Positions 7,066 through 22,706 of a DNA stretch of 64,000 nt are shown in pieces. A model generated the notes under the pieces. That model was not told the DNA's origin. It ran no database searches and was given only the letters and a program-made list of their open reading frames with translations. This stretch comes from Rebecca billardiae RCC1528 (taxonomy: Eukaryota > Protista > Haptophyta), in assembly GCA_965240325.2 (NCBI GenBank), contig OZ251225.1, positions 1,736,001 through 1,800,000 of the forward strand. The letters run 5' to 3'. The position numbers and the translations under genes were made by a program. Every line of letters begins with the position of its first letter. Position 1 is the stretch's first letter.

Positions 7066-8836
7066 CTACCCCGCAGCGTGGTCGTCCTGCCGTGACTGGC
7101 GATGCCTTGCGTCATCCTGCTCAAAGACCTTGGCGCGCATGGACTCCTCCACCGTCGCCATCGCCGCCTGCAGCTGCGCCTTGAAATCCATCTCGGCGTC
7201 GGAGGAGCCGTGCTGCTGGAAGATCTGGCCGAGCAGCTTGAGGCCGTGGGCGCGGCGCTGCCGCTGCGCTGGCGGCACGCTCGAGTCGGTGAGCACCTTG
7301 TCGCACACGTGCGACAGGGTGCGCTCGATGTCGATGACGGAGACGCGCCACGCGGACTCGAGCATCAGCGCCATCGCGCCCGTGCGCTCCATCTCCTCCG
7401 CCCTGGCGCGGGCGGGCGAGGGCGGGGCGCGGGAGGCGAGGGCGCTCGGCGCGCGCACGTGAGCCGGGGCCGCGGAAGCAACCGGCGGGTGCGGAGCGCG
7501 CCTCCGGCACAGGCGGTGGCGCGCGCTCGCGCGCGCGCGCGCACATGCTCTGCCCCTTCGCCTCCGCATCCACGCCGTCGAGCCGCTTCTCGATCGACTT
7601 GAACACCTGGTAGGTGCGCACGCCCGCCTTGGCCGCCTTGATGGCGGACGAGGCGGCCTTGCCGTGCGACTTGAGCCTGGCGACGTGCGAGGCGACGGCG
7701 TTGACGGGCCCTTCGGATATGTACTCCTCCGCCTTGTTCTCGTACGCGCAGCCGATCGTGTGCAGCAGCACGTCGCCGAACGACGCCACCGCCAGCCGCT
7801 CCGCCAGCGCGTGCATGTCGGAGGCGAACTCGGCCTCGTCACCCGCGCCAAACTGCGCGAGCATGTCGGCGAGCCCGACCGCGGCGAGCACCTCGCGCCG
7901 GCGCTGCCGCCAGGCGAGCTGCTTCTCGCTCACCTCGGTGCCCTCCATCGCGAAGAGCATCGCCAGCTGCAGCTCGCCGATCAGCATCTCGAACTGCTCC
8001 GAGCCGAAGAGGATGGCGAAGAAGGTGGTCGAGTCGAGCAGCGTCTGCTGGTTGATTGCGTCCTTGCCCTTCTGGTCGTACCGCGCGCGCAGCTCGTCGT
8101 TCGAGAGGACCTGGTAGGCCTCGCCGACGCGCTGGAACTCCTGCTTGGCGGTGGGATTGCCCGGGTTCTTGTCGGGGTGCAGCTGCCGCGCCAGCTTGTA
8201 GTACGCCTTCTTGATGTCCGCGGACGACGCGGACGGCGGCACGCCAAGCGCGTCATACAGCTCCGAGTCCGCCACCTGCTTCTTCGCGCCGCCGGCGCCA
8301 TCGCCGCCGCTCCCGCCGCTCCCGCCGCCGCCGCCGCCGCCCGCCGCGGAGCCGTCGGCGTCACCGCCGACGAGCACCTCGAGCGCCTCCTCCCGCAGGT
8401 TGTACCACACCCACTCCCTCTTCTCGTGGTTCCACACCTTGCCCTGCTGCGACTGCACGAACGCATCGCCCGTGTTCACCACGCCGCGGGCGATCTGGGT
8501 GAGGCCGACGGCGGCGCCCGCAACGGGGAGGGTGACTGCGGCGGCGACGCCGATGCCCAGACCCGTCACGAAGCCACGCATCCCATCCTGCTGCGCGCCC
8601 ACGACGGGCGCCGCGACGAGGCCGGCGACGCCTGCGAGCACGCCCTTCGTCACGCTCTTCAGGCCGGACGACGTGCCCGCGACGACGTCCTTCGGGCGGC
8701 GCGTGGAGAAGAGCATGCCCATATTCCCATCGCTGCCGTCGCTGGCCCCGTCCGCAAGCGACGCGCCGCCGAAGGGTACTAGCGCCGTCGAGGCCGCCGT
8801 CGAGGCCGCCGCGGTCGCAGACTTGTCGTCCGCCAT
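7066..8836 (-). CDS. DnaJ-domain protein with C-terminal DnaJ-X domain (ATJ10/CAJ1-like); 2 exons
   Basis: J domain LYDALGV...IKKAYYKLARQLHPDKNP...FQRVGEAYQVLS. X-domain motifs FGSEQFEMLIGEL and DIERTLSHVCDKVL. Exons 8836-7545 and 7402-7066, phase-2 GT-AG intron 7544-7403 restores SMAEEMER. Confidence 0.9.
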
Positions 8837-8937
8837 TTCGTGCTGCAGCTGGGTGACCAAGGGCGTGAGATAGGAAGCTTCCAGGAAGGGTTGTTGGCCG
8901 CGCCCGCCGCGCGCACGCGGGGCCGCGGCGGCCAGCG
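8837..8937. promoter_or_regulatory. Putative bidirectional promoter (DnaJ / TSEN54)
   Basis: Only 101 nt between divergent ATGs. Confidence 0.45.
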
Positions 8938-9819
8938 ATGGCGGACAGGCCGCACGCCGAGTGGGTCCCTGAAGAGCGCGCGGCGCTCGTCGTGCTGCCC
9001 AGAGGGACGAGCCTGTCGCGCTTCGGCTACACGAGGCGTGGGCAACACTGGCTCCACCCCGAGGAGGCGCTCTATCTCTTCGAGGAGCACGGCCTCTGCC
9101 TCTGCATCGACGGGACGCGCGCGGCGACGCGGCTGGCGTTCAGCACGTTGCTCGACAGCCCTGCGACACTGCGGCGGTACACGGCCTTCCTTCACCTCCT
9201 GAAGCACGGGTACGTGTGCAGACCCTCTCTGACGCGCCCAAGCCCTCGCGCGGGCCTCGCGCCCGACTACGACGTCTTCGATGGCGCGCGCTTCCGACGA
9301 GGGGCGGCGAGCCGCGGGGAGGTCCCACCCGTGGCTCACCTCATCGTCGCAGACTACACGGAGCCACCCCCACCGTTCGGCGAGCTGTGCGAGCTATGCA
9401 CATGGTGCGGCGCAGCCGTGCTTGTGGCAGTCGTCGGAGGATCAGACGTGAGCATCCTCGAAGTGCAAGCTGGCACGCCACAGCCGGAGAGGCGCGCCCC
9501 GGCGCCGCAGGGACACGGAGCAGCAGCCGCCCACCTGCAGCTGCCCACCTCGCCATTCCCTTGCGCACGGGGAGAAAACGTGCCTGTCCGCATGGGATGG
9601 GTTCGAGCGCACGCTGCGCTCGCTGCGCTCACCGGGGGTCCTTGCGCGGCACTGCTCGCAGCTGGTGTGGTCTCGCTGGTAGTCGTGGTGCTCGGCCGCC
9701 GACGCATCTCTCAGTCTCAGGGCCCCGGCGGCGCCGGTGTCACACGAGCCGCATCCATGATTCGCAGTGGTCTACGTTGGGATAGGGCCCCAGGCGGGTT
9801 GCCGGCGCACATCAGCTAG
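8938..9819 (+). CDS. TSEN54: tRNA-splicing endonuclease subunit Sen54-like
   Basis: AEWVPEERAALVVLPRG...FG...WLHPEEALYLFE and YTAFLHLLKHGYVC match the Sen54 N-terminal domain. The C-terminal third is less certain. Confidence 0.75.
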   Translation: MADRPHAEWVPEERAALVVLPRGTSLSRFGYTRRGQHWLHPEEALYLFEEHGLCLCIDGTRAATRLAFSTLLDSPATLRRYTAFLHLLKHGYVCRPSLTRPSPRAGLAPDYDVFDGARFRRGAASRGEVPPVAHLIVADYTEPPPPFGELCELCTWCGAAVLVAVVGGSDVSILEVQAGTPQPERRAPAPQGHGAAAAHLQLPTSPFPCARGENVPVRMGWVRAHAALAALTGGPCAALLAAGVVSLVVVVLGRRRISQSQGPGGAGVTRAASMIRSGLRWDRAPGGLPAHIS

Positions 9820-12319: not shown

Positions 12320-15300
12320 ATGAGCAGTTGGCGCGCGATGCTCGGCCGCGGCGGCAGCGCCAAGGTCGACGCGAGCGAGAAAGCGCGCACGCTGGCCGAG
12401 GCTGATGGCCAGAGCTCCTCCATCCGCGATGCCGCGCCACGGAAGCCGCAGAAGCAGCAGCCAAGCGCTTCCCGCGCGGCCACAGGCAAGGACGCGACGG
12501 CGGGGCGCAAGGGCATCCTGCGCTCCGCGAACAGGGGCGGTTCCCGGCACCACCGCGGGCATCGCATCAAGTGGCGTGCCGTGCTTGTCGGTGACGACGC
12601 TTCTGAGCGGCACCAGGAGGTCCAGCGCCGGCTCGAGGAGGAGGCCGCCTCGCGCGAGCGGCGCGAGCGATTCCAGGTGCGCCGCGCGCGCGCGCGCGCC
12701 AACGCTGCCGTCGGGTGCGTGGCCGTTGGCCCCGGCTCACACCGCCGTTCTGGCTCCCCCGCGCCCACCCGCACGCACCGCGCGCGCGAGCGCGCGCGGC
12801 GCAGCACTACGCCAAGATCGCGCGGCTGCCCATCCTGTCGGTTGAGAACTTTCTCATTCCGCTCCGGCTCGCCATGCCCGTGCTGCTGGCGAGCAGCCCG
12901 GCGGCGATCGGGCTCGACGTGCTCTGCGACTTCTTCGAGCTGTGCTGGGTGGTGAACGCGCTCGAGAACGCGCGGCGCGAGGCGCGCGCGGCGGAGGCGG
13001 ACGCCGCGCCCGGCGGCCCGGCGCAGCGGCCGCGGTACTCGCTCACGCACGCGGCGCGCGACCTGGTCGTGCTCTGCTCCCTCCACGCCGGCCGCGCGCT
13101 CACGCTCCTGACGGGGCACACGCTCTACTTCGAGGTGCTGCTCGCGCCGCGGCTGATGCGCGTGCGCGAGCTGATCCACTTCATCGACGACATCAACAAC
13201 GACCTCTCCACCTCGGTCTCCTTCCTCGCCGTGTACAAGTTTGGGCTGGTGCTCGTGATGGTGCCGCACTGGGTGGCGTGCGCGTGGTGGCTGATCGCGA
13301 CTCGGTGGGCGAGCGGCGAGCCGCTCGAGCTGCCGCACTGGACGGCGCAGTTCGAGCTGCTCACGGGGAACGAGGAGCTCGACCCGTTCGCCCTCTCGAG
13401 CTGGGAGACCTACCTCATGGCACTGTACATGGCGTGGGCGGGGATGACCGCGATGGGCTACGGTGCGCGCGGGGGCGCTCGCGCTCATCGATTCGCGCAT
13501 GCGCGCCGCGCGCGCGCGGCCCCCTCACGCCCGGCCCCGCGCCGCTCGCTCCGCCGCGCACACCCCGTCGCTCCGCAGGCACGCTGGTGATCACCGTGCA
13601 ATCCGAGATCATCTTTGCGATCGTGATCTCGCTCGTGCAAATCGTGTTCTACGCGTTCGTGTTTGGCACGCTCTTCCACTACCTCGTGCGCACGGACGAG
13701 GCGACGGTGCACGCCAAGCAGCTGCTCAAGGCGGTGGACGAGTACACCGCCGAGCGCAAGCTGCCCGCCGAGCTCGCCGCGCGCATCCGCGGGCACTTCG
13801 AGTTCCAGCACCGCAAGAGCGCGGCCGCGACCGAGCGGATCTTCTCGCAGATGCCGCTCTCGCTCAAGACGGAGGTGGCGGTCGAGCAGTACGCGCGCGA
13901 GCTCGGCGCGACGCCGCTGCTGTACGCGTGCTCGCCGCAGTTCCTCAACCAGCTGGCGCTGTACCTGCGCGAGCGGTACGTGATGCCGCAGGAGACGGTG
14001 CTCGAGCGCGGCGAGGGCGCGACCGAGCTCCTCTGGTGCCTGGGCGGCTCGCTGTTTGTGAAGAAGGCCGACCTGCTCGTCTCGACCATCCGCTCCGACC
14101 TCGGCCCCGGCCAGATCGTCGGCGAGGTCGCCTTCTTCGCCGGCGTGCCGCAGCCGTACACGGTGCTCGCGACGCCGTCGGGCGAGGTGACCCTCGCCGT
14201 GCTCACGAGCATCGCGTTCGAGGAGATCGTCGGCTCGTACCCCGAGCAGGCCGACCTGATCACCGTCTCGCTGCTGCGCGGGTACGGCCTCGACAAGATG
14301 GGGCAGGACCTGCCCGGCGGCGCGGTCGGCGTCGACCTGAACGCGCTCTCGGAGGACGAGCAGAAGGAGCACGAGGCGCTGCGCGAGATGATCCGCGGGG
14401 CGATCGCCGGGAGAAACGAAGACCAGCTCTCGCAGATGCTGCTCGCGGTGTGGCAGGGCGACACGGAGACGGTGCGCACGCTCACGGCGCGCGGCTTCGA
14501 CCTCGACGCCGGCACGTACGACCAGCGCACGACGCTCCACCTCGCCGCGCTGCAGGGCAACGTCGCCATCGTCAAGCTGCTCTGCGAGCTCGGCGCGGAC
14601 GTGAACGTGAAAGACCGGTTCGGCTCGGTGCCGCTCAACGACGCCGTCGACAAGCAGCACTCGGGCGTGGCGGAGGAGCTGGCCAAGCACGGCGCCGAGC
14701 TGCAGCTCGAGCGGCCGGCGTCGAGCATGCACGCCGCCGCGCGCAGCGGCAGCCTGGCGCACCTGCGCATGCTGCTCGCGTACGGGGTCGAGGTGAACGC
14801 GGCCGACTACGACGCGCGCACCGCGCTGCACGTCGCCGCGTCGAACGGCGCGATCCGCGTCGTCGAGTACCTGCTCACCAGCATGGCGGACGTAGACGCG
14901 CGCGACCGCTGGGGCCGCTCCGCGCTCGACGAGGCGATCCAGTACGAGCACACCCTGGTCGCTCGGCTGCTCGCCTTCCACTCGGCGACGCCGGACGAGC
15001 CGCTGATGCGCGTGCGCATGCGCACCGCGGCCGCGGCGGGCGACGCGGAGACGCTCCGCTTCCTGATCGACATGGGCGCGCCCGCCGACATCCGCGACTA
15101 CGACGAGCGCACCGCGCTGCACTACGCGGTGCAGGCGGGCTCGATCTCGGCGACGCACCTGCTCGTCTCCTCACTCGCTGACGTCAACCTCACCGACCGC
15201 TGGGGCCGGCCGCCGATCGTGGACGCGCTGCAGAGCAACCACGAGATCGCGGCGCTGCTCTCGCACGCGGGAGGCGCGGAGGTGCCCGCCGAGTGGGCCG

Positions 15301-18300
15301 ACGCGGTCCCCTCGTCGGCGCTGCAGCAGGCGCAGGGCGGCTCGGGCCATCGGATGTACGCGCTCACGCGCAAGGTGCAGGAGCGCGCGCGCACGCGCCA
15401 GGCGGACGCGGACACGAAGCGCAACAAGACGCACGAGGTGACGCGCGCGATCAGCAAGCTCGGGCGCAAGATGCACGACCTCGCGCGCGCGCAGCGCTCG
15501 CTCTTCCGCACGCTCGGCCGCCACGCTGACCTGTGGATCAACGAGTACGGGCTGGCGGACGAGAGCGCGGACGACGACACGGACAGCGACCCGTCCGACG
15601 GCGACAGTGACAGCGACAGCGACGGCAGCGGCGACGGCGGCACCGCGGCCGCCGCCGCGCTCGTCACGTCAGGCAGCAGCCTGAACAGCGACGCGAACGG
15701 CGCGGGCGGCGGCGGCCTCTCCTCGCAGCGCTTCATCAAGCTGGTGCTGCAGCTGCCCAAGGCGGAGCAGGGTCTGACGACGCTGCGCGCCGCGTTCGCC
15801 GCCAAGCTCTCCCCCTCCGACCGCCGGGGTCTCCCGGACCGCGAGCGCCGGCGCGCGGAGGACCTGTCTCTCACGTCGCTGCTCGTCCTCGACCTCGGCC
15901 TCTCGCCCGAGCAGGCGCAGCAGGTGCGCGGCGAGATCTACGCCGAGCTCTTCAACTTCATCGGCGTGCCGATGGACGGCGACGGCGCGGCGGGCGTGCG
16001 CGGCGCGGCCGGCTCGGCGCTCGCCGAGGTCGCCGAGGCGGACGAGCAGGAGCAGCTGGCGCGCGTGGCCGTGCCCGGCGCGCCCTCCGCGACCGCGCAA
16101 GCGTACGAGCCGGCGCGCCCTGAAGTCGCGGTGCTGGCTGTGCCGAAGCGCACGCCCGGCGGCACGCGCCGCTTCCCAACGCGCTCCGCCGCCGACGCCA
16201 CCGGCGGCAGCGGCTCGGGCGCGGCCAGCCCGCTGGCGGGGCGCGCGGGCGGGATCGCGCGCCGCGGCTCCGGCACTGGCATGTCCCTCGTCGAGCTGTC
16301 GCGCCACTTGCAGAGCGTGGACGAGGAGCACGCCGCGCGCGAGGCGGCGGCGGGCGCGGGCCCGCTCGCCGGCCTCGGCGTGCCCGAGCCGCCCGTCGAG
16401 TACGAGCCCATCTTCCTCTCCGACCTCGGGCACGCCGTCCTGTTCTGCTCGCCGGCTTTCCTCGGCGCGCTCGCAGAGGTGCACGCTCGCGCCGCGGCTG
16501 GCGAGGGTGCCGCGCGGCAGTCGGGAGCCGCGGACGGCGAGGAGGGCACCGTCGCCAAGGCGCGGCGCAAGTTCCGGCTGTCGGCCAACTCCGCCATGTC
16601 CGCCATGCCTCCCAAGGGCAGCAAGGCCGGCTCGGTGGCCGGCAGCAACGGCCGCGCGCCGCGCGGCAGCGAGCGGTCGTGCCTGAGCAGCGAGAGCCCG
16701 TCGACAACGCTGAGCTGCAACGACAGCCTCTCGCGCGGCAGCGCCGGCAGCCGCTCCACGCGCGGCAGCGGCGGGCGCTTCTTCCGCGGCAGCGTCGGCG
16801 CGCGCTCGGGGTACAGCGGCGCCAGCGGCTACAGCGGCTACAGCGGCTACTCACCGGCCAATGCCAGCGCGCGCCCGTCGCGCATCGGCGCGGACGATGC
16901 CGACAGCGATGCGAGCGCGCCCGCGTCCAAGCCAGCCGCGCAGCCCCCCGCCGGCAGCGAGAGCCAGGCGCAGGCCCGCCCGAACGCGTGTGCAATCTTC
17001 CCCATCAACGCCGCGCCGAGCGCCTCCGACGCCTCGGCGGCCGCGCCGAGCGCGACCGTCGCCTCGATCGCCCAGGCCATGCACATTGTGTCGCAGCTCT
17101 TTGCCGTCTTCGACGTCGGCCGGCACGGCGCCGTCCGCCTGCGCGACGTGCGCCAGCTGCAGGGTGCGCGCGCGCGCCGCGCTGCGCCGCGCGCGCCCGC
17201 AGCCGCGCTGGGCGCGCGCTCTGTCCCTCAAGCGCGCGCACGCGCGCGTGCCGAGGTGTGACTCGGCGCGCACCCGCCGACCGCGCGCCCTGCGCCTGGC
17301 ACGCCGCGCCGCGCCGCGTGCCGCGCCGCGCGCAGGCGCGCTCGGCGAGATGGGCTCTGACGAAATCCGCTCGTTCCTCTCCTTCCTGGTGGAGAGCAGC
17401 CGGGCGTTCGCGCCCACCGCCGCCGACCGCCAGCTGGGCGTGCCCGAGGAGCAGCGGCGTGGCAGCCCTCAGCCGCGCCGCTCCTACGGCGACAGCCCGC
17501 ACGCCCAGGCCCGTCGCTCGCACGGCTCGGCCAGCCCTGCAGCCGGCAGTCCGCTCGGGGCCTCGAACCGCGCCGCGCCTGTCGCGGCCGGTCCGAGCGG
17601 CACCGGCTCGGAGCCCGCGGCGTCGGCGCTCTCGCCCGTCCACCAGCCCTCCTCGGCAGACCCGCGCCGGGCTAACGTCGCGCCCGCGCCGCCGCCCGCC
17701 GACGATGAGGCGGCGCCTGCAGCGGCCGAAGGCGCCGCGGACAGCGCGCACCTCCAAGCAGCGGTGCGCTCGCCCGCCGAGGCGGCCGCGCGCGGCTCTG
17801 CCGATACGGGCCGCGCGTCCGGCGGCGAGGGGGAGGAGGAGGAAGAGGAGGAGGAGGCGGGCGCGCCGGAAGACGCGCCGCTCTTCGCGCAGGCGCCGCC
17901 GCCGGCGAGCGCGCTCGTGAGCGGCACAGCCAGCGGCACGGTCGCTCTCGAGCTGCGCCGCCGCGGGCGCAAGCGGCCCTCCAACGGGCTGTTCGCCTCG
18001 CAGTCCTCTGTCCTCGGCGCTGCGGAGGGCTGGCGCGCCAAGAGCAAGGTGCCCAAGCAGATGACCAAGGTGCAGTTCGTGATCGGCGTCACGTCGTGGA
18101 TCCTGCTCTCCGCGGACGGCGAGGGCGAGGCCGAGGCAGACGGCGGCGCGGACGGCGCGGACGATCTGAAGCTCTCCCTCGCGAGCGTCGGCGGCGGCCC
18201 GCTTTCGCAGCCGCTGCAGCCGTCGCAGCGTGAGGACTTGGCCGTTGTTGAGTCCTCCGAGGCCAAGGCGCGCGGCGCGGCGCTCGACTCCGCCAGGCTC

Positions 18301-21300
18301 AAGGCGGAGCTAGACGACGTGCTCGTGACGCACGCCGCGTGCCACGCGATCTCCGACTCGATCTCGCAGCGCATAGAGACGAACCGGCTGAAGGGAGGCG
18401 AGCTGGCGACCGCGCCCGAGCTGCTTCACCTGGTCGCACACGTCGCGACGCTGCCGGCCGGCACGCGCGCGCAGCACATCAGCGCGTGGTGCGCCGAGCA
18501 CCTCGGCCTGGAGCTCGAGACGAGCTCGGTGGACGCGGTGGGCAGCGCGCTCACGGCCGCGGCGGCGGCGGCGGCGGGCGAGGCGACTGCAGGCTTGCGC
18601 GTGCCAGGCGGCTCGCCCGCAGCCGCGGCCGCGGCCAAGGCCGCGCCCGCCGAGGTGGCGGCAGCCGTCCTGGCGGCAGCGGAGGCGGAGGAGGAGGGCG
18701 GGCGAGTCACGTGGAGCCGGCTCGCGAGCGCGCTGCAGCACAAGGCGGCGGAGCTGCGCGCCAAGTCGACGGCCGGTGGCGCCGCCGCCGCCGCCCTGCT
18801 CGCGGCCGGCGGCGGCGCGGCCGCCGTCGCGCCGGACACGCTCGAGCTCGAGGCGCGGCCGTGGCACGTTCTCTCGATCCACTCGGCCGCGTACAAGGTG
18901 TGCCACGCGGTGCTGCTCGGCGTGTGCCTCCTCGACTTTCTGCTCATCCCGCTGCAGCTCGCGTTCGTCGACCTGACCGAGCACATGGCGTGGCTCAGCG
19001 CCGTCAACTACGCGTGCGACGCGCTGTACATCCTGCACGTGGCGCTGCGCTTCAACGTGTCGCACGTGAACGAGGCGTCGCGCGAGGTGTTCGCGCCGCG
19101 CGAGATCCGGAAGCACTACCGCGACACGGACTTCACGCTGGACGCGTTCGCGTCGTGGCCGCACAACTGGCTGCTGCTCGCGGTGGGCGTCGACCACGTG
19201 ATCGTCGCGAGCGTGCGCCTCCTGCGCCTCCTCAACCTGCGGCACCTGTGGCGCGCCGTGCGCGCGTGGCAGAGCCGCACGAGCGAGCAGCTGGGCGCCG
19301 AGCTGCTCAAGTTCCTCGCCACGATGCTGTTCACCGCGCACGTGTGCGCGTGCGCCTTTTACGTGTTCGGGTACACCGAGCTCGCGCACGAGCACACGAG
19401 CACGACGTGGGCCGACCTGTACCGCGTGCAGAACAAGGCGGTGGGCGGCGTGGACTACTTCTACGAGTCGACCGAGGCGCGCCTGTTCGACAAGTACATC
19501 GTGAGCCTCTTCATGATCGTGAGCATGCTCACCACGCTCGGCGTGGCGCAGCTGCCGGCGAACGTGGCGGAGCTCGGCTTCTACCTCGCCATGTTCGTGC
19601 TCAACATGACGGTGTACGCGTGGACGGTCGGCGGCATCTCGGGCGTCGTGATGAAGCTGGACGACGAGGTGGTCGCCAAGCGCGCGCAGCTCGAGCTCGT
19701 CGACGCGTATCTCGCGCATATCTCGGTGTCTGCCGAGCTCAAGGAGCGGATGCGCAAGTACTTCATTAAGCGGCTGCAGTCCGCCTCGCTGTCCAACGTG
19801 ACCAACGACGAGATCTACGCCGCGCTGCCGATGAGCCTGCAGATGGAGGTCTCGCAGCACGTGAACCGCTCGCTCGTGGGCAACTGCTCGCTGCTGCGCG
19901 GCTGCTCGGACGCCTTCCTCAACAGGCTGTCCTCCATGCTCCGCGAGCGCGAGGTCGAGGCGGAGACGATGGTCTTCCGCGCGGGCGACGCGTGCAAGGA
20001 GCTGCTCTTCCTCGGCCGCGGCGCGATCGAGATGCTCAGCGTGGTCGAGCAGCCGGAGGAGCAGCAGACGGGCGCAGACGACGAGCTGCTGATGGAGGTG
20101 GTCGACGTGCTCGGCGAGGGCGACACGCTCGGCGACATGCAGGTCTGTTTGTCTGCGCGCACGCACGCGCAAGCGCACGCGGAAGCGCGCGCTCATGCGC
20201 GCGCGGGGAGTGTGTGCGCACGGGGAGGGCGGGCAGGGTGCGGTGCCGTGAGCCTGCGGTCGACATGCAGAACGACCCCGCGGGGTGTGCGCGCGCGGGC
20301 GGGCCTTCAGACGTGCGCTCTCACGCGCCCATCTCCGCGCTCTCCGACGCCCCGACGCGCCTCGGCTGCCCGCGCCGCGCACGCGCGCACCAGTTTGTCT
20401 TTGGCATCCGGCACATCGTGAGCGCGCGCGTCGCCAAGGGCGCCGACGCGTTCGTCTTCTCGCTCTCGCGGGAGCGGTACCGCGACCTGCTCAAGCTCTT
20501 CCCCTCGCAGGAGGACGTGGTGATGGACAACGCCGTGCGGCAGTATGACGGTGCGCGGCGCACGCAGCGCAGCGCAGCGCGCGCTGAGCCGTGCCGCGCC
20601 GCGCCGCGCGCCGCCGTGCAACGCCGCGCGCCGCGCGCGTCGCCCGAGCTGACAGTCGCGCGGCCCAACCCACGGCGCTGGCGGCCCTTTGACGCCCGCT
20701 CGCGCGCCCGCCCCTCTCTTCCACGCAGGCGTGGTCACGTCGCGCACGTCGCACACGCAGGAGGGGACGCACTCGCGACGCACGTCGGTCGCGGCCTCGG
20801 AGGCGAGCGGCTTCAGTGCGGCCAAGCCTTCCGAGGCAGGCAGCGCGGCGCCGAGCGTGACCGCTCGGAGCACCGTCAGCGTCGGCAGCGCCGCCGGTCG
20901 GTCGTACGCGACGTCGGAGGCGCCCTCAGACGCGCGCTCGGCCGCCGCGTCGCTCAAGTCGTTCAAGGAGAGCGACCTCAAGAGCGTGCAGACGGTGTGA
21001 AGCGCCCGCGCACCGAGCGCGCGCCGCATCGCGCCTGCGGGCACGGCGGCAGCAGCCGCGCGCGCCGCGCCCCCCAGCCCGGTCTGACGCCGACGCCCCT
21101 GCATGCCCGCGCGCGCGCACAGGTCGTGACGGTCGCCAAGCGCAAGCGGCGCGAGCTGCAGCACTCGCGGCTGTGCACGGCGTGCTCCAAGGGCGAGCTC
21201 GACACGGTGATGCGGCTGCTCGCCACGAACCAGCTCGACATCAACTTTGGCGACTTCTCAGGCCGCGCGGCGCTGCACCTCGCCGCGTGCGGCGGCAACA

Positions 21301-22706
21301 CGCGCGTGGTGGAGCTGCTGCTGGCCGCGCGCGCCGAGATCAACGTCGAGGACAAGCGGGGCGCCACGCCGCTCGCGGACGCGCTCGCCAACGGCCAGGC
21401 CGAGGTGGCCGAGCTGCTCGCCGCGCGCGGCGGCCGGCATGGCTCACAGTCGCTCGCTGACGCGCTGTGCGACGCGGCGCACACCGCGGACGGCAGCGGC
21501 CTCGCGCAGCTGCGGCGGCTCACGCAGTACGGCGGCGACGCGAACGCGGCCAACGCGGAGCGGCGCACTGCGCTGCACATCGCCGCCGCCGACGGCAACA
21601 CCGAGGCAGTCCGGCTGCTCCTCGAGCACCGGGCCGACGTAAACGTTACAGACCGCTCTGGCGGCACGCCGCTGCGCGACGCGCTGCTCGCGCGCGAGGA
21701 CGGCGCCGCCGCGGCGCTGCTGCAGAACGGCGGCGAGCTGGGCGACTTTGATGCGGCGCTGCACATGTGCCGCACGGCCGCGGCCGACGACGCGGAGCAC
21801 CTCGCCCGGCTGCTGCGCGTGCGCTGCGACGTCAACGCCGCCGACACGCACGGGCGCACCGCGCTTCACCTCGCCGCGTCGCGGCTGCACGTGCGCTCGT
21901 GCCACTTCCTACTCACCACCGCCGGCCTCGACGTGAACGCCGAGGACCAGATGGGGCACACGGCGCTGGACGACGCGCTGCGCGAGGAGCCGAGCGGCAG
22001 CCGCGTGCTCAGCACGCTGATCAGCGCGCACGGCGGCCGGCGCGGCTCCGCCAAGCCGCACATCTCCGCCGAGGCGCTCGCCGCGCGCCGCGCCGACATC
22101 GACCGCGAGAGGCTGCAACGGGTGGAGGGCTCGATCGCGGCGCGCGACGCGCTGCTGGCCAAGCTGCGCGCGCTCGACGAGTGGGTGGGCACGGAGCAGA
22201 AGGCGGTGGCGCGCGTGCGCTCGGCCGTGGACGACGCGCTGCAGCTCGAGCGCGCGCACGGCGCCGTGCTCGCCGACCAGCGCCCCGAGCTGTGGAGCAC
22301 CCTGCTTGAGTACTCTGAATCTCACCACGCTTGGTTTGCGCACGCGGCGCGCTCGGTGCAGCCGTCGCTCCTCACGTGGGGCGAGGAGTCGAAGGAGGTC
22401 CGCTTCGCCGCGAAGCCGCTCAAGTCGCTGCACGGCAAGGTGCGCCCCAGGCCGCGCGCCCGCGCGCTCTCCACCCCCGCCCCCGCCCCCGCGCGAGCAT
22501 GCACCGAGGCCGCGAGCGCCCATCTGCCCACACCGCCCCGCCGGCGCCGCCCTGACCCGTGACCGTTCGTCCGCGCGCGTTCGCGCGCGCAGCTCAAGGA
22601 CGTGCTACGGGTGCACGACGAGGGCGCGCGCGCCGTCGAGCGGCTGTGCGAGGTGGACTTCCGCCCGCCGAAGCAGCAGCCCGAGCCCGCAGCGGCAGCC
22701 AAGTAG
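12320..22706 (+). CDS. Tandem double Shaker-like (SKOR/AKT-type) cyclic-nucleotide-binding, ankyrin-repeat cation channel, 3086 aa, 8 exons
   Basis: Exons 12320-12676, 12805-13462, 13579-17163, 17336-20142, 20394-20550, 20729-20994, 21123-22439 and 22593-22706. All introns are GT-AG and phase-compatible; total 9261 nt. Module 1: HWVACAW S5, pore GMTAMGYGT, C-linker/CNBD (GEVAFF), 9 ankyrin repeats. EF-hand-like LFAVFDVGRHGAVRLRDV in the linker. Module 2: S4 VRLLRLLNLR, HVCACAFY, pore MLTTLGVAQLP, CNBD, 9 ankyrin repeats. Confidence 0.88.

What the first reader, a model, noticed from the sequence alone, without database searches (positions are those of the whole stretch)
12320..22706. Two Shaker-like channel subunits fused in one chain with unlike selectivity filters
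Seen: one spliced 3086-aa ORF with [6TM-pore-CNBD-9 ankyrin] x2, joined by a roughly 1000-aa low-complexity linker containing an EF-hand-like motif. Pore 1 is TAMGYG and pore 2 is TTLGVA. The phase-1 intron 17164-17335 joins the modules in frame. Established: plant SKOR/AKT channels are single-module tetramers with TxGYG, and loss of the YG (as in CNG channels) removes strict K+ selectivity. Inference: a dimer would form a pseudo-tetramer with a fixed 2:2 alternating filter, possibly with unusual selectivity and combined cNMP, voltage and Ca2+ gating. I do not know a characterised channel with this architecture.
Basis: partly seen in the sequence, partly recalled or inferred. Interest (0 to 1): 0.75.

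Follow-up and report, generated by a model that had tools for sequence, protein, structure and literature searches.

The report
Two-module ion channel with unlike pores
This alga, probably a haptophyte, has one gene for two different channel units joined in a single chain, one with the classic potassium filter and one without. It belongs to a conserved family of about 40 such genes, so the design is real, but how it conducts ions is untested.

Summary
Eight GT-AG exons (12320-22706, + strand) give a stop-free 3086-aa reading of [6TM-pore-CNBD-ankyrin] twice. Pore 1 is TAMGYG (aa 334) and pore 2 is TTLGVA (aa 2266), joined by a linker of about 1045 aa rich in Ala, Ser and Gly.

The single chain is not an artefact of the proposed 17164-17335 intron:
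- The genome holds about 40 paralogous loci with the same order and strand.
- In 16 of 20 fetched loci the first CNBD and module 2 share one stop-free frame. In 6 of them both whole modules do.
- Relatives include a 2647-aa ORF on one MMETSP transcript and Diacronema lutheri proteins of 2650-2867 aa, filed as "hypothetical".

The unlike pairing is conserved, not decay. Pore 1 is T[AS][ML]GYG in 18 of 20 paralogs. Pore 2 is [ST]xLGxxQxPxN in 17 of 20, and 19 keep the core.

Not supported:
- The EF-hand: loop positions 3 and 5 are Gly and His, there is no Pfam hit, and it is not conserved.
- Canonical cNMP binding: the key Arg is absent in module 1 in 21 of 21.

Whether two chains form one 2:2 pore remains inference.

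Two-repeat CNBD channels were described in silico in 2020 (PMC7576140), so this is a new variant. The scan met this family before in the same genome, as giant LOV-array paralogs.

The parts
12320..12676 (+). Exon 1: start codon and a basic, Ser/Ala/Gly-rich cytoplasmic N-terminus (119 aa)
   Evidence: First ATG where GC content rises. The donor is CAG|GTGCGCCG. There is no homology support for this exon.
12805..13462 (+). Exon 2: module 1 transmembrane part (weak S1-S3, S4 with RxxRxR, S5, pore helix), ending inside the last Gly codon of TAMGYG
   Evidence: It is 37-56% identical to the matching part of 20 paralogs. The window copy has no Pfam Ion_trans hit. In whole paralog open frames Ion_trans_2 matches the module-1 pore at 19.7-31.3 bits, over the 22.5-bit cut-off in two of three.
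13447..13462 (+). Pore 1 selectivity filter TAMGYG (the last Gly codon is completed by 13579-13580)
   Evidence: The filter is T[AS][ML]GYG in 18 of 20 paralogs.
13579..17163 (+). Exon 3: module 1 S6, C-linker, CNBD (13974-14234), ankyrin block (about 14412-15233), a conserved post-ankyrin stretch to aa about 990, then the first half of the low-complexity linker
   Evidence: Pfam. Paralog coverage is 20 of 20 up to aa about 990 and then falls away. GC3 is 0.90-1.00 to about 17100.
17094..17163 (+). EF-hand-like motif, first part (LFAVFDVGRHGAVRLRDVRQLQ). It continues after the intron at 17336-17400.
   Evidence: Loop positions 3 and 5 are Gly and His. It has no Pfam hit and is not conserved in paralogs.
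17164..17335 (+). Phase-1 intron joining the two halves (172 nt, 86% GC, GTGCGCGC...GCGCGCAG). It contains the in-frame stop at 17259-17261.
   Evidence: The exact junction is not verified by RNA.
17336..20142 (+). Exon 4: second half of the linker, a conserved island (18013-18540), module 2 S1-S6 (Ion_trans 18898-19614), C-linker and the first part of CNBD 2
   Evidence: Pfam. The AlphaFold model has pLDDT 76.6 and matches Eag1, HCN1, hERG, CNGA and GORK. Paralogs are 38-51% identical.
19531..19548 (+). Pore 2 selectivity filter TTLGVA (followed by QLPAN)
   Evidence: The full motif [ST]xLGxxQxPxN is present in 17 of 20 paralogs, and 19 of 20 keep the TxLG..P.N core. G235, P240, N242 and E245 are invariant.
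20394..20550 (+). Exon 5: the rest of CNBD 2, including the conserved FVFGIRHxxxAR cassette
20729..20994 (+). Exon 6: Ser/Ala-rich spacer
21123..22439 (+). Exon 7: module 2 ankyrin block and a helical tail
   Evidence: Pfam. It is 36% identical to the module 1 ankyrin block.
22593..22706 (+). Exon 8: C-terminus and stop codon (22704-22706)
   Evidence: GC content falls after the stop.

Best explanation
Shown: 12320-22706 is one gene for a single-chain, two-module member of the CNBD family of six-helix cation channels.
- Module 1 is closest to plant outward rectifiers (GORK/SKOR). It keeps a GYG filter but has a weak voltage-sensor half.
- Module 2 is closest to KCNH channels. It has a well-formed voltage sensor and a conserved filter that keeps T-T-L-G but replaces the Tyr-Gly.
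- The gene is an ordinary member of a family of about 40 genes in this genome, which is probably a pavlovophyte haptophyte. The family is also present in Diacronema lutheri and in marine transcriptomes.
- In this family the order of modules, the unlike pores and the unlike CNBD cassettes are all conserved.

Inferred:
- Two chains pair so that the four pore domains alternate (1-2-1-2) around one pore, as two-pore channels (TPC) and K2P channels do.
- Module 2 supplies the lower sites (Thr-Thr-Leu-Gly). Module 1 supplies the upper Gly-Tyr-Gly ring but often lacks the inner Thr (Ala in this copy).
- The pore would therefore have two-fold symmetry, and its cation selectivity is probably weaker than a classic K+ channel's.
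- Gating is most likely by voltage through module 2's S4, modulated by the two non-canonical CNBD-like domains and the ankyrin blocks.
- The roughly 1000-aa linker is a variable regulatory tether. In three paralogs the same open frame carries arrays of LOV-type PAS domains upstream of module 2.
For: Gene model:
- The model is a stop-free 3086-aa reading.
- GC3 shows an unbroken coding signal that switches frame at the proposed intron.

Family in this genome:
- About 42 module-2-type loci were found. At least 35 of them have a module-1-type match 4.5-7 kb upstream on the same strand.
- All 20 fetched loci hold module 1 and module 2 in the same order.
- In 16 of 20 the first CNBD and module 2 share one stop-free frame of 2079 to more than 3000 codons. 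In L007, L008, L010, L014, L016 and L019 both whole modules do.
- Pfam on three such open frames gives Ion_trans_2, cNMP, Ank, Ion_trans and cNMP.

Public relatives:
- P0003 (2647 aa) is an ORF on one MMETSP transcript. P0001 (2704 aa) fills an 8.4-kb contig with short flanks.
- Diacronema lutheri KFE25_007711 (2650 aa) is 60% identical to L007 module 2. KFE25_010589 and KFE25_008060 are further members.

Conserved asymmetry:
- The modules are old and divergent. The transmembrane parts show no BLAST similarity (E 1.5) and the C-linker/CNBD parts are 30% identical.

Fold and precedents:
- The module 2 model matches CNBD-family channels.
- L018 has lost both filters together, which is a weak hint that the two pores work jointly.
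- Single-chain repeats that form one pore are known from CNGK, TPC and K2P (established knowledge).
Against: - No RNA from this organism was available, so the exact 17163/17336 junction is unverified.
- Nothing here tests stoichiometry. A roughly 1000-aa flexible linker does not force the two modules of a chain into the same pore.
- The window copy's CNBD scores fall just below Pfam's cut-off.
- Module 1's first three helices carry charged residues and are not recognised by Pfam or by matches to solved structures, which start near S4.
- The module-1 structure model was too poor to use (pLDDT 50.5).
- Selectivity cannot be read from sequence. Several paralogs have GLG, GSG or GAG in pore 2 (L010, L011, L013, L014). 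These are closer to K2P-type K+ filters, so the family may be more K+-selective than the window copy suggests.
Confidence: 0.6

Rival explanations
1. One chain, two pores. Four chains assemble so that the four module-1 units form a GYG pore and the four module-2 units form a separate TTLG-type pore. The two channels would be tethered by the long linkers and would have different selectivity.
For: - The linker is about 1045 aa, low in complexity and poorly conserved, so it puts no geometric limit on how the modules assemble.
- Each module has its own complete C-linker, CNBD and ankyrin block. In GORK, SKOR and AKT1 this block builds a four-fold cytoplasmic ring (established knowledge).
- In three paralogs the linker is tens of kilobases long.
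Against: - The two modules have diverged in complementary ways. Module 1 keeps GYG but often lacks the inner Thr and has a weak voltage sensor. Module 2 keeps TTLG and a good voltage sensor.
- L018 lost both filters together.
- In all characterised single-chain repeat channels (CNGK, TPC, K2P, Cav/Nav) the repeats share one pore (established knowledge).
Confidence: 0.28
2. Two adjacent genes at this locus. A module-1 gene would end at the TGA at 17259-17261, and a module-2 gene would start at the ATG at 17350.
For: - The exon-3 frame does hit a stop at 17261.
- An ATG lies 89 nt downstream.
- P0002 is a 1773-aa MMETSP ORF marked complete that holds only module 2.
- 514 GT..AG pairs could restore the frame by chance.
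Against: - The gap would be under 100 nt at 86% GC, with no drop in GC such as is seen at the true ends of the gene.
- The coding GC3 signal runs through both halves of the linker.
- 16 of 20 paralogs need no intron at all to link the modules.
- Relatives are fused on single transcripts.
Confidence: 0.05
3. Module 2 (or module 1) does not conduct and serves only as a sensor or scaffold for the other module, as in HCN-like channels with a closed pore.
For: - Pore 2 lacks Tyr-Gly.
- The last two filter positions vary among paralogs: A, S, G, P or V at the final one.
- L018 carries a deletion in the pore 2 helix yet keeps a 2477-codon open frame.
Against: - The pore helix, T-x-L-G, the Q-x-P-x-N turn and S6 of module 2 are strongly conserved, with invariant G235, P240, N242 and E245.
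- The closest pairs give dN/dS of 0.16-0.33.
- This is the pattern expected of a working pore loop.
Confidence: 0.07

Closest known systems
[quoted passage not shown] 2020, Sci Rep, PMC7576140)
   Same: Two 6TM-CNBD repeats in one ORF. The first and second repeats are under 30% identical and evolve as separate, co-evolving lineages. They are known only from sequence.
   Different: - That paper reports filters close to TVGY/FG and treats deviations as rare. Here repeat 2 has a conserved non-GYG filter.
- The word "ankyrin" does not occur in the paper, whereas each repeat here ends in an ankyrin block.
- Tandem channels are named there only for dinoflagellates, oomycetes and a chlorarachniophyte, not for haptophytes.
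- Common descent was not tested here.
Plant outward-rectifying Shaker channels GORK/SKOR (and AKT1)
   Same: The layout is 6TM, TxGYG pore, C-linker, a CNBD-like domain without the cNMP-binding Arg, and ankyrin repeats. These are the best solved-structure matches of module-1-type sequence (E 4.5e-49).
   Different: - Plant channels are single-module subunits that form tetramers.
- No KHA tail domain was detected here.
- Module 1's S1-S3 are not alignable.
- The residue after GYG is Thr or Pro, not Asp.
KCNH channels (hERG, EAG1, KCNH5)
   Same: These are the best sequence and fold matches of module 2 (E 3.3e-29; Foldseek). The filter region aligns without gaps: T-S-V-G-F-G-N-V-S-P-N in hERG-like public hits against T-T-L-G-V-A-Q-L-P-A-N here.
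   Different: Phe-Gly is replaced by Val-Ala. No PAS/eag domain was detected ahead of module 2 in this copy. The module is fused behind another module.
CNGK / tetraKCNG sperm channels
   Same: Several 6TM-CNBD repeats in one polypeptide form one pore. This is a characterised precedent.
   Different: CNGK has four repeats, short linkers, GYG-type filters, canonical cGMP binding and no ankyrin blocks.
K2P and two-pore (TPC) channels
   Same: A dimer of two-pore-domain chains gives a pseudo-tetramer whose two filter types differ, for example GYG with GFG or GLG in K2P.
   Different: The transmembrane layout differs in K2P (2+2 helices). Neither has a CNBD or ankyrin. Both have short inter-repeat linkers. 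The resemblance is by analogy only.

Membership tests
CNBD-family six-helix channels (KCNH / HCN / CNG / plant Shaker) | Voltage-sensor-type S1-S4 plus S5-P-S6 pore domain | tested here: met
   Module 2 has Pfam Ion_trans at 43.9 bits against a cut-off of 25, and its AlphaFold model matches Eag1, HCN1, hERG and GORK. Module 1 is met only in part: the window copy has no Ion_trans hit. In whole paralog open frames Ion_trans_2 on the module-1 pore scores 22.6, 31.3 and 19.7 bits against a cut-off of 22.5. Matches to solved structures start near S4.
CNBD-family six-helix channels (KCNH / HCN / CNG / plant Shaker) | C-linker and a cyclic-nucleotide-binding-type domain after S6 | tested here: met
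   In the window copy cNMP_binding scores 25.5 and 23.7 bits, just under the 27.5 cut-off. It scores 55.7-68.3 bits with two stretches in full-length paralogs, and 47-63 bits in P0001, P0003 and P0156.
CNBD-family six-helix channels (KCNH / HCN / CNG / plant Shaker) | Ability to bind cNMP: Arg and Thr/Ser of the phosphate-binding cassette | tested here: not met
   Module 1 reads GE-x-A-F-x-x-G-x-x-Q-P-Y-T-V in 21 of 21 copies, with Gln-Pro where Arg-Thr is expected. Module 2 reads F-V-F-G-x-R-H-x-x-x-A-R, which does not fit the canonical cassette. This was judged against the canonical motif from established knowledge. Binding itself is not testable here.
Plant Shaker channels (AKT1 / KAT1 / SKOR / GORK) | One 6TM-CNBD(-ankyrin) module per subunit, with four subunits per pore | tested here: not met
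   Two modules sit in one chain.
Plant Shaker channels (AKT1 / KAT1 / SKOR / GORK) | TxGYGD filter | tested here: inconclusive
   Module 1 has TAMGYG followed by Thr, not Asp. Module 2 has TTLGVA.
Plant Shaker channels (AKT1 / KAT1 / SKOR / GORK) | C-terminal KHA domain | tested here: not met
   No KHA family appears among Pfam hits at E <= 0.01 in the exon pieces or in full paralogs.
Two-repeat tandem CNBD channels (PMC7576140) | Two 6TM-CNBD repeats in one ORF, with the repeats diverged from each other | tested here: met
Two-repeat tandem CNBD channels (PMC7576140) | Both filters near the TVGY/FG consensus | tested here: not met
   Pore 2 is TTLGVA here. It follows [ST]xLGxxQxPxN in 17 of 20 paralogs, and 19 of 20 keep the TxLG..P.N core.
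Two-repeat tandem CNBD channels (PMC7576140) | Common descent with the dinoflagellate and oomycete clades | not tested
   I had no referenced sequences of those clades in hand, so no tree was built.
CNGK / tetraKCNG | Four repeats in one chain | tested here: not met
   There are two repeats. Four-repeat GYGD proteins do exist in the public library as separate families.
EF-hand Ca2+-binding motif | A 12-residue loop with oxygen ligands at positions 1, 3, 5 and 12, and Gly at position 6 | tested here: not met
   The loop DVGRHGAVRLRD has Gly at position 3 and His at position 5. No EF-hand Pfam hit appears in either exon piece, in paralogs or in relatives. The motif spans the intron, and the joined peptide was not sent to any search.

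The most novel reading that the evidence does not exclude
Two chains form one pore in which GYG and TTLG-type filter strands alternate in a fixed 2:2 pattern. This would give a natural six-helix channel with a two-fold-symmetric filter of non-classical selectivity. In addition, the long inter-module linker would be a plug-in site for sensor domains (LOV-type PAS arrays in three paralogs). The family of about 40 genes would then be a modular sensory-channel platform particular to pavlovophyte haptophytes.
Probability: 0.4. Interest if true: 0.8.

Novelty: new variant of a known kind. Interest (0 to 1): 0.55.

Why it matters
Selectivity filters of six-helix K+-type channels are normally four identical strands. 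Mixed filters have mostly been studied in engineered concatemers. A natural, conserved family that hard-wires one GYG strand to one non-GYG strand would show what a two-fold-symmetric filter of this kind selects for. The roughly 40 paralogs also sample different residues at the last two filter positions.

The family also extends single-chain tandem CNBD channels to haptophytes. It gives the baseline architecture for the giant LOV-array paralogs of the same genome, which are candidate light-regulated channels. In public databases the relatives are filed only as hypothetical proteins.

Tried and rejected
- **Module-1 structure model.** I predicted the structure of a module-1-type sequence (L007, alignment of 6 sequences). 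The mean pLDDT was 50.5 and pTM 0.31. This was too poor to use, so no fold search was run on it, and the state of module 1's voltage sensor stays open.
- **Remaining paralog loci.** Pore tables therefore cover 20 of about 42 loci.
- **dN/dS as a decay test.** It is only usable for the closest pairs (0.16-0.33). Synonymous distance saturates near 0.38 in this codon-biased genome, and WIN/L001 even gives a ratio above 1. I relied on column conservation instead.
- **Frame restoration as evidence for the intron.** I rejected this argument as weak, because 514 alternative pairs would also restore the frame.
- **Conserved island before module 2 (18013-18540).** I looked for a PAS/eag-like domain there. 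It holds only two short conserved motifs and looks helical, and it has no family hit.
- **Literature.** Searches for haptophyte tandem or LOV channels found nothing beyond PMC7576140.
- **Joined model.** The spliced 3086-aa model was put together only inside scripts from window.fa, to check frame, length, motifs and composition. All searches used single exons or uninterrupted paralog frames by reference.


Full report
**What is in the window**

The region lies in very GC-rich DNA (69-79% GC). It has long open frames on the + strand that change frame several times. Reading the junctions directly gives eight exons bounded by GT..AG introns. The exons are 12320-12676, 12805-13462, 13579-17163, 17336-20142, 20394-20550, 20729-20994, 21123-22439 and 22593-22706.

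Joined inside a script, they give 9261 nt, which is 3086 codons plus a stop with no internal stop. TAMGYG is at residue 334 and TTLGVA is at residue 2266. The introns are 116-251 nt long and 76-86% GC, and five of the seven begin with GTGCGC. GC content falls on both sides of the unit but not in the middle.

The joined model was used only in scripts for frame, length and motif checks.

**Domain content**

Pfam on the exon pieces finds:
- Ion_trans in module 2 (43.9 bits);
- strong ankyrin hits after each module;
- cNMP_binding at 25.5 and 23.7 bits, just under the 27.5-bit cut-off.

Module 1's transmembrane exon gets no Ion_trans hit. The two modules are old and divergent:
- their transmembrane parts show no significant BLAST similarity (E 1.5);
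- the C-linker/CNBD parts are 30% identical;
- the ankyrin blocks are 36% identical.

By sequence, module 2 is nearest to KCNH2/hERG, EAG and then GORK. A module-1-type paralog is nearest to GORK and SKOR, but only from about S4 onward. An AlphaFold model of the window's module 2 (20-sequence alignment, pLDDT 76.6) matches Eag1, HCN1, KCNH5, hERG, CNGA and GORK.

**One gene or two**

It lies in an unconserved linker and hides a stop at 17261. Frame restoration by itself means little, because 514 GT..AG pairs would do it. Three lines of evidence settle the matter.

1. *The coding signal is continuous.* Third-position GC is 0.90-1.00 in the exon-3 frame up to about 17100. It is then 0.82-0.98 in the exon-4 frame up to module 2. 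There is no non-coding gap, and the switch falls at the proposed intron. That intron is the only listed pair with the donor and acceptor seen at this gene's other introns and with a length in their range.

2. *The genome holds many paralogs with the same layout.* A search of the whole genome with module 2 finds about 42 module-2-type loci. At least 35 have a weaker module-1-type match 4.5-7 kb upstream on the same strand. I fetched 20 of them:
   - all have module 1 and module 2 in the same order;
   - in 16 the first CNBD and module 2 lie in one stop-free frame of 2079 to more than 3000 codons;
   - in six (L007, L008, L010, L014, L016, L019) both whole modules do;
   - Pfam on three of these open frames, given by reference, shows Ion_trans_2, cNMP_binding, ankyrin, Ion_trans and cNMP_binding in one chain.

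3. *Public relatives are fused as well.* The library search returns proteins of 2100-2900 aa with two matched stretches.
   - P0003 (2647 aa) is an ORF on one MMETSP transcript.
   - P0001 (2704 aa) fills an 8.4-kb contig with short flanks.
   - Both have the full double architecture.
   - Every relative that carries a name is a Diacronema lutheri hypothetical protein: KFE25_007711 (2650 aa, 60% identical to L007 module 2), KFE25_010589 and KFE25_008060.

   The genome is therefore probably a pavlovophyte haptophyte. That is an inference from the best hits.

**Is the unlike pairing conserved?**

- *Pore 1* is T[AS][ML]GYG in 18 of 20 paralogs, once the differently placed introns are read. The exceptions are L019 (GYV) and L018 (RSYA).
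- *Pore 2* follows [ST]xLGxxQxPxN in 17 of 20. Two more (L013, L015) keep the T-x-L/I-G and P-x-N but have Ala or Thr in place of the Gln. L018 carries a deletion. Gly, Pro, Asn and the following Glu are invariant in the 20-sequence alignment.
- *Relatives* repeat the pattern: TSMGYG with TALGIAQVPVN in P0001, and TALGYG with TTLGMESMPAN in P0003. Some Diacronema-type members have GYA in pore 1.

Pore 2 aligns without gaps to the KCNH filter. It keeps the inner Thr-Thr-Leu-Gly and replaces the aromatic residue and the last Gly. The last position varies among A, S, G, P and V, and four paralogs have GLG, GSG or GAG. Module 1 often lacks the inner Thr (Ala in this copy).

The two filters therefore look complementary rather than one being decayed. 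For the closest pairs dN/dS is 0.16-0.33. Deeper pairs are uninformative because synonymous distance saturates.

**What is not supported**

- *EF-hand.* The loop (DVGRHGAVRLRD, residue 1517) has Gly and His at liganding positions 3 and 5. No EF-hand family hit appears in the exon pieces or in any full-length paralog or relative. The linker from about residue 1140 to 1735, which holds the motif, is not conserved among paralogs.
- *Canonical cyclic-nucleotide binding.* Module 1's cassette has Gln-Pro in place of Arg-Thr in all 21 copies. Module 2 has a different, equally conserved cassette. Both domains are under constraint but are probably CNBD-like modules of the plant-Shaker or KCNH kind.
- *Voltage sensing.* S4 carries two or three Arg in module 1 and three to five basic residues in module 2.

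**How it probably works**

Shown: one chain, two unlike conserved modules, a conserved order, and a variable linker.

Inferred, by analogy with TPC, K2P and CNGK: two chains place their four pore domains alternately around one pore. This gives a two-fold-symmetric filter that is likely less K+-selective than GYG tetramers. Gating would come mainly from module 2's voltage sensor and be tuned by the cytoplasmic rings.

The main rival is that the long flexible linker lets each module type form its own tetramer, giving two tethered pores. Nothing here excludes that. The only hints against it are the complementary divergence of the modules and the joint loss of both filters in L018.

**Context and novelty**

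Two-repeat tandem CNBD channels were reported from sequence in dinoflagellates and oomycetes in 2020 (PMC7576140). That paper describes filters near TVGY/FG. It does not mention ankyrin, and it names no tandem channel in haptophytes. Four-repeat CNGK channels are characterised. I found no paper on this haptophyte family.

The public library also holds other two-module families with two non-canonical filters, for example in Rhodelphis marinus.

Earlier notes of this scan describe giant paralogs of the same genome whose inter-module linker carries LOV and RGS arrays. I confirmed part of this. PAS_9 (LOV-type) matches lie in the same 13615-, 12933- and 8009-codon open frames as module-2 matches.

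The window's gene is thus the plain form of a family that the scan met before on other DNA. It is best rated as a new variant of a known kind. It is of moderate to good interest because of the conserved mixed filter and the size of the family.

Noticed in passing
G000:C8:1555399-1592607, C8:1488377-1522096, C3:3524942-3545548 (all minus strand): Three paralogs have a module-2-type match inside open frames of 13615, 12933 and 8009 codons. The same frames hold dozens of regularly spaced PAS_9 (LOV-type) matches upstream of module 2. For the C3 locus a module-1-type match lies a further 3 kb upstream (C3:3548833-3549549).
   Followed up: partly
L018 (G000:C19:978933-988833), pore 1 near 2345-2480 and pore 2 near 8444: This paralog has lost both filters. 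Pore 1 reads A-R-S-Y-A instead of A-M-G-Y-G, and pore 2 has a 5-residue deletion in the pore helix. It still keeps a 2477-codon open frame.
   Followed up: partly
window 18013-18540: A conserved island lies just ahead of module 2's S1, with the motifs QFxVGVxSWIL and a helical stretch ending in IPxGT...W...LG. It is shared at about 30% identity by 8-12 paralogs and has no family hit.
   Followed up: partly
L009 (G000:C8:2644879-2654779), module 2 at 7742-9001: The module-2 match runs through one TGA (open frame ends at 8224). This is either a small intron or a broken copy.
   Followed up: no
public proteins P0018, P0027 (Rhodelphis marinus), P0025, P0042, P0060, P0088, P0092: This is a different set of two-module CNBD-channel proteins of 2000-3000 aa in which neither filter is a canonical GYG, for example ANLGNLG with SGVGYSE. 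Many two-module proteins with GYGD in both filters and four-module GYGD proteins are also in the library.
   Followed up: no
whole genome G000: At least 152 Ion_trans matches were found, many in four-repeat open frames of 1500-2700 codons. This is an unusually rich channel set for a 72-Mb genome.
   Followed up: no
L001-L003, L013, L015, L018, L020 against the window and L004-L012: The intron in or next to the pore 1 filter sits at different codons in different paralogs: after GMT/GMS, after GY-G, or absent. This points to intron gain, loss or sliding within the family.
   Followed up: no
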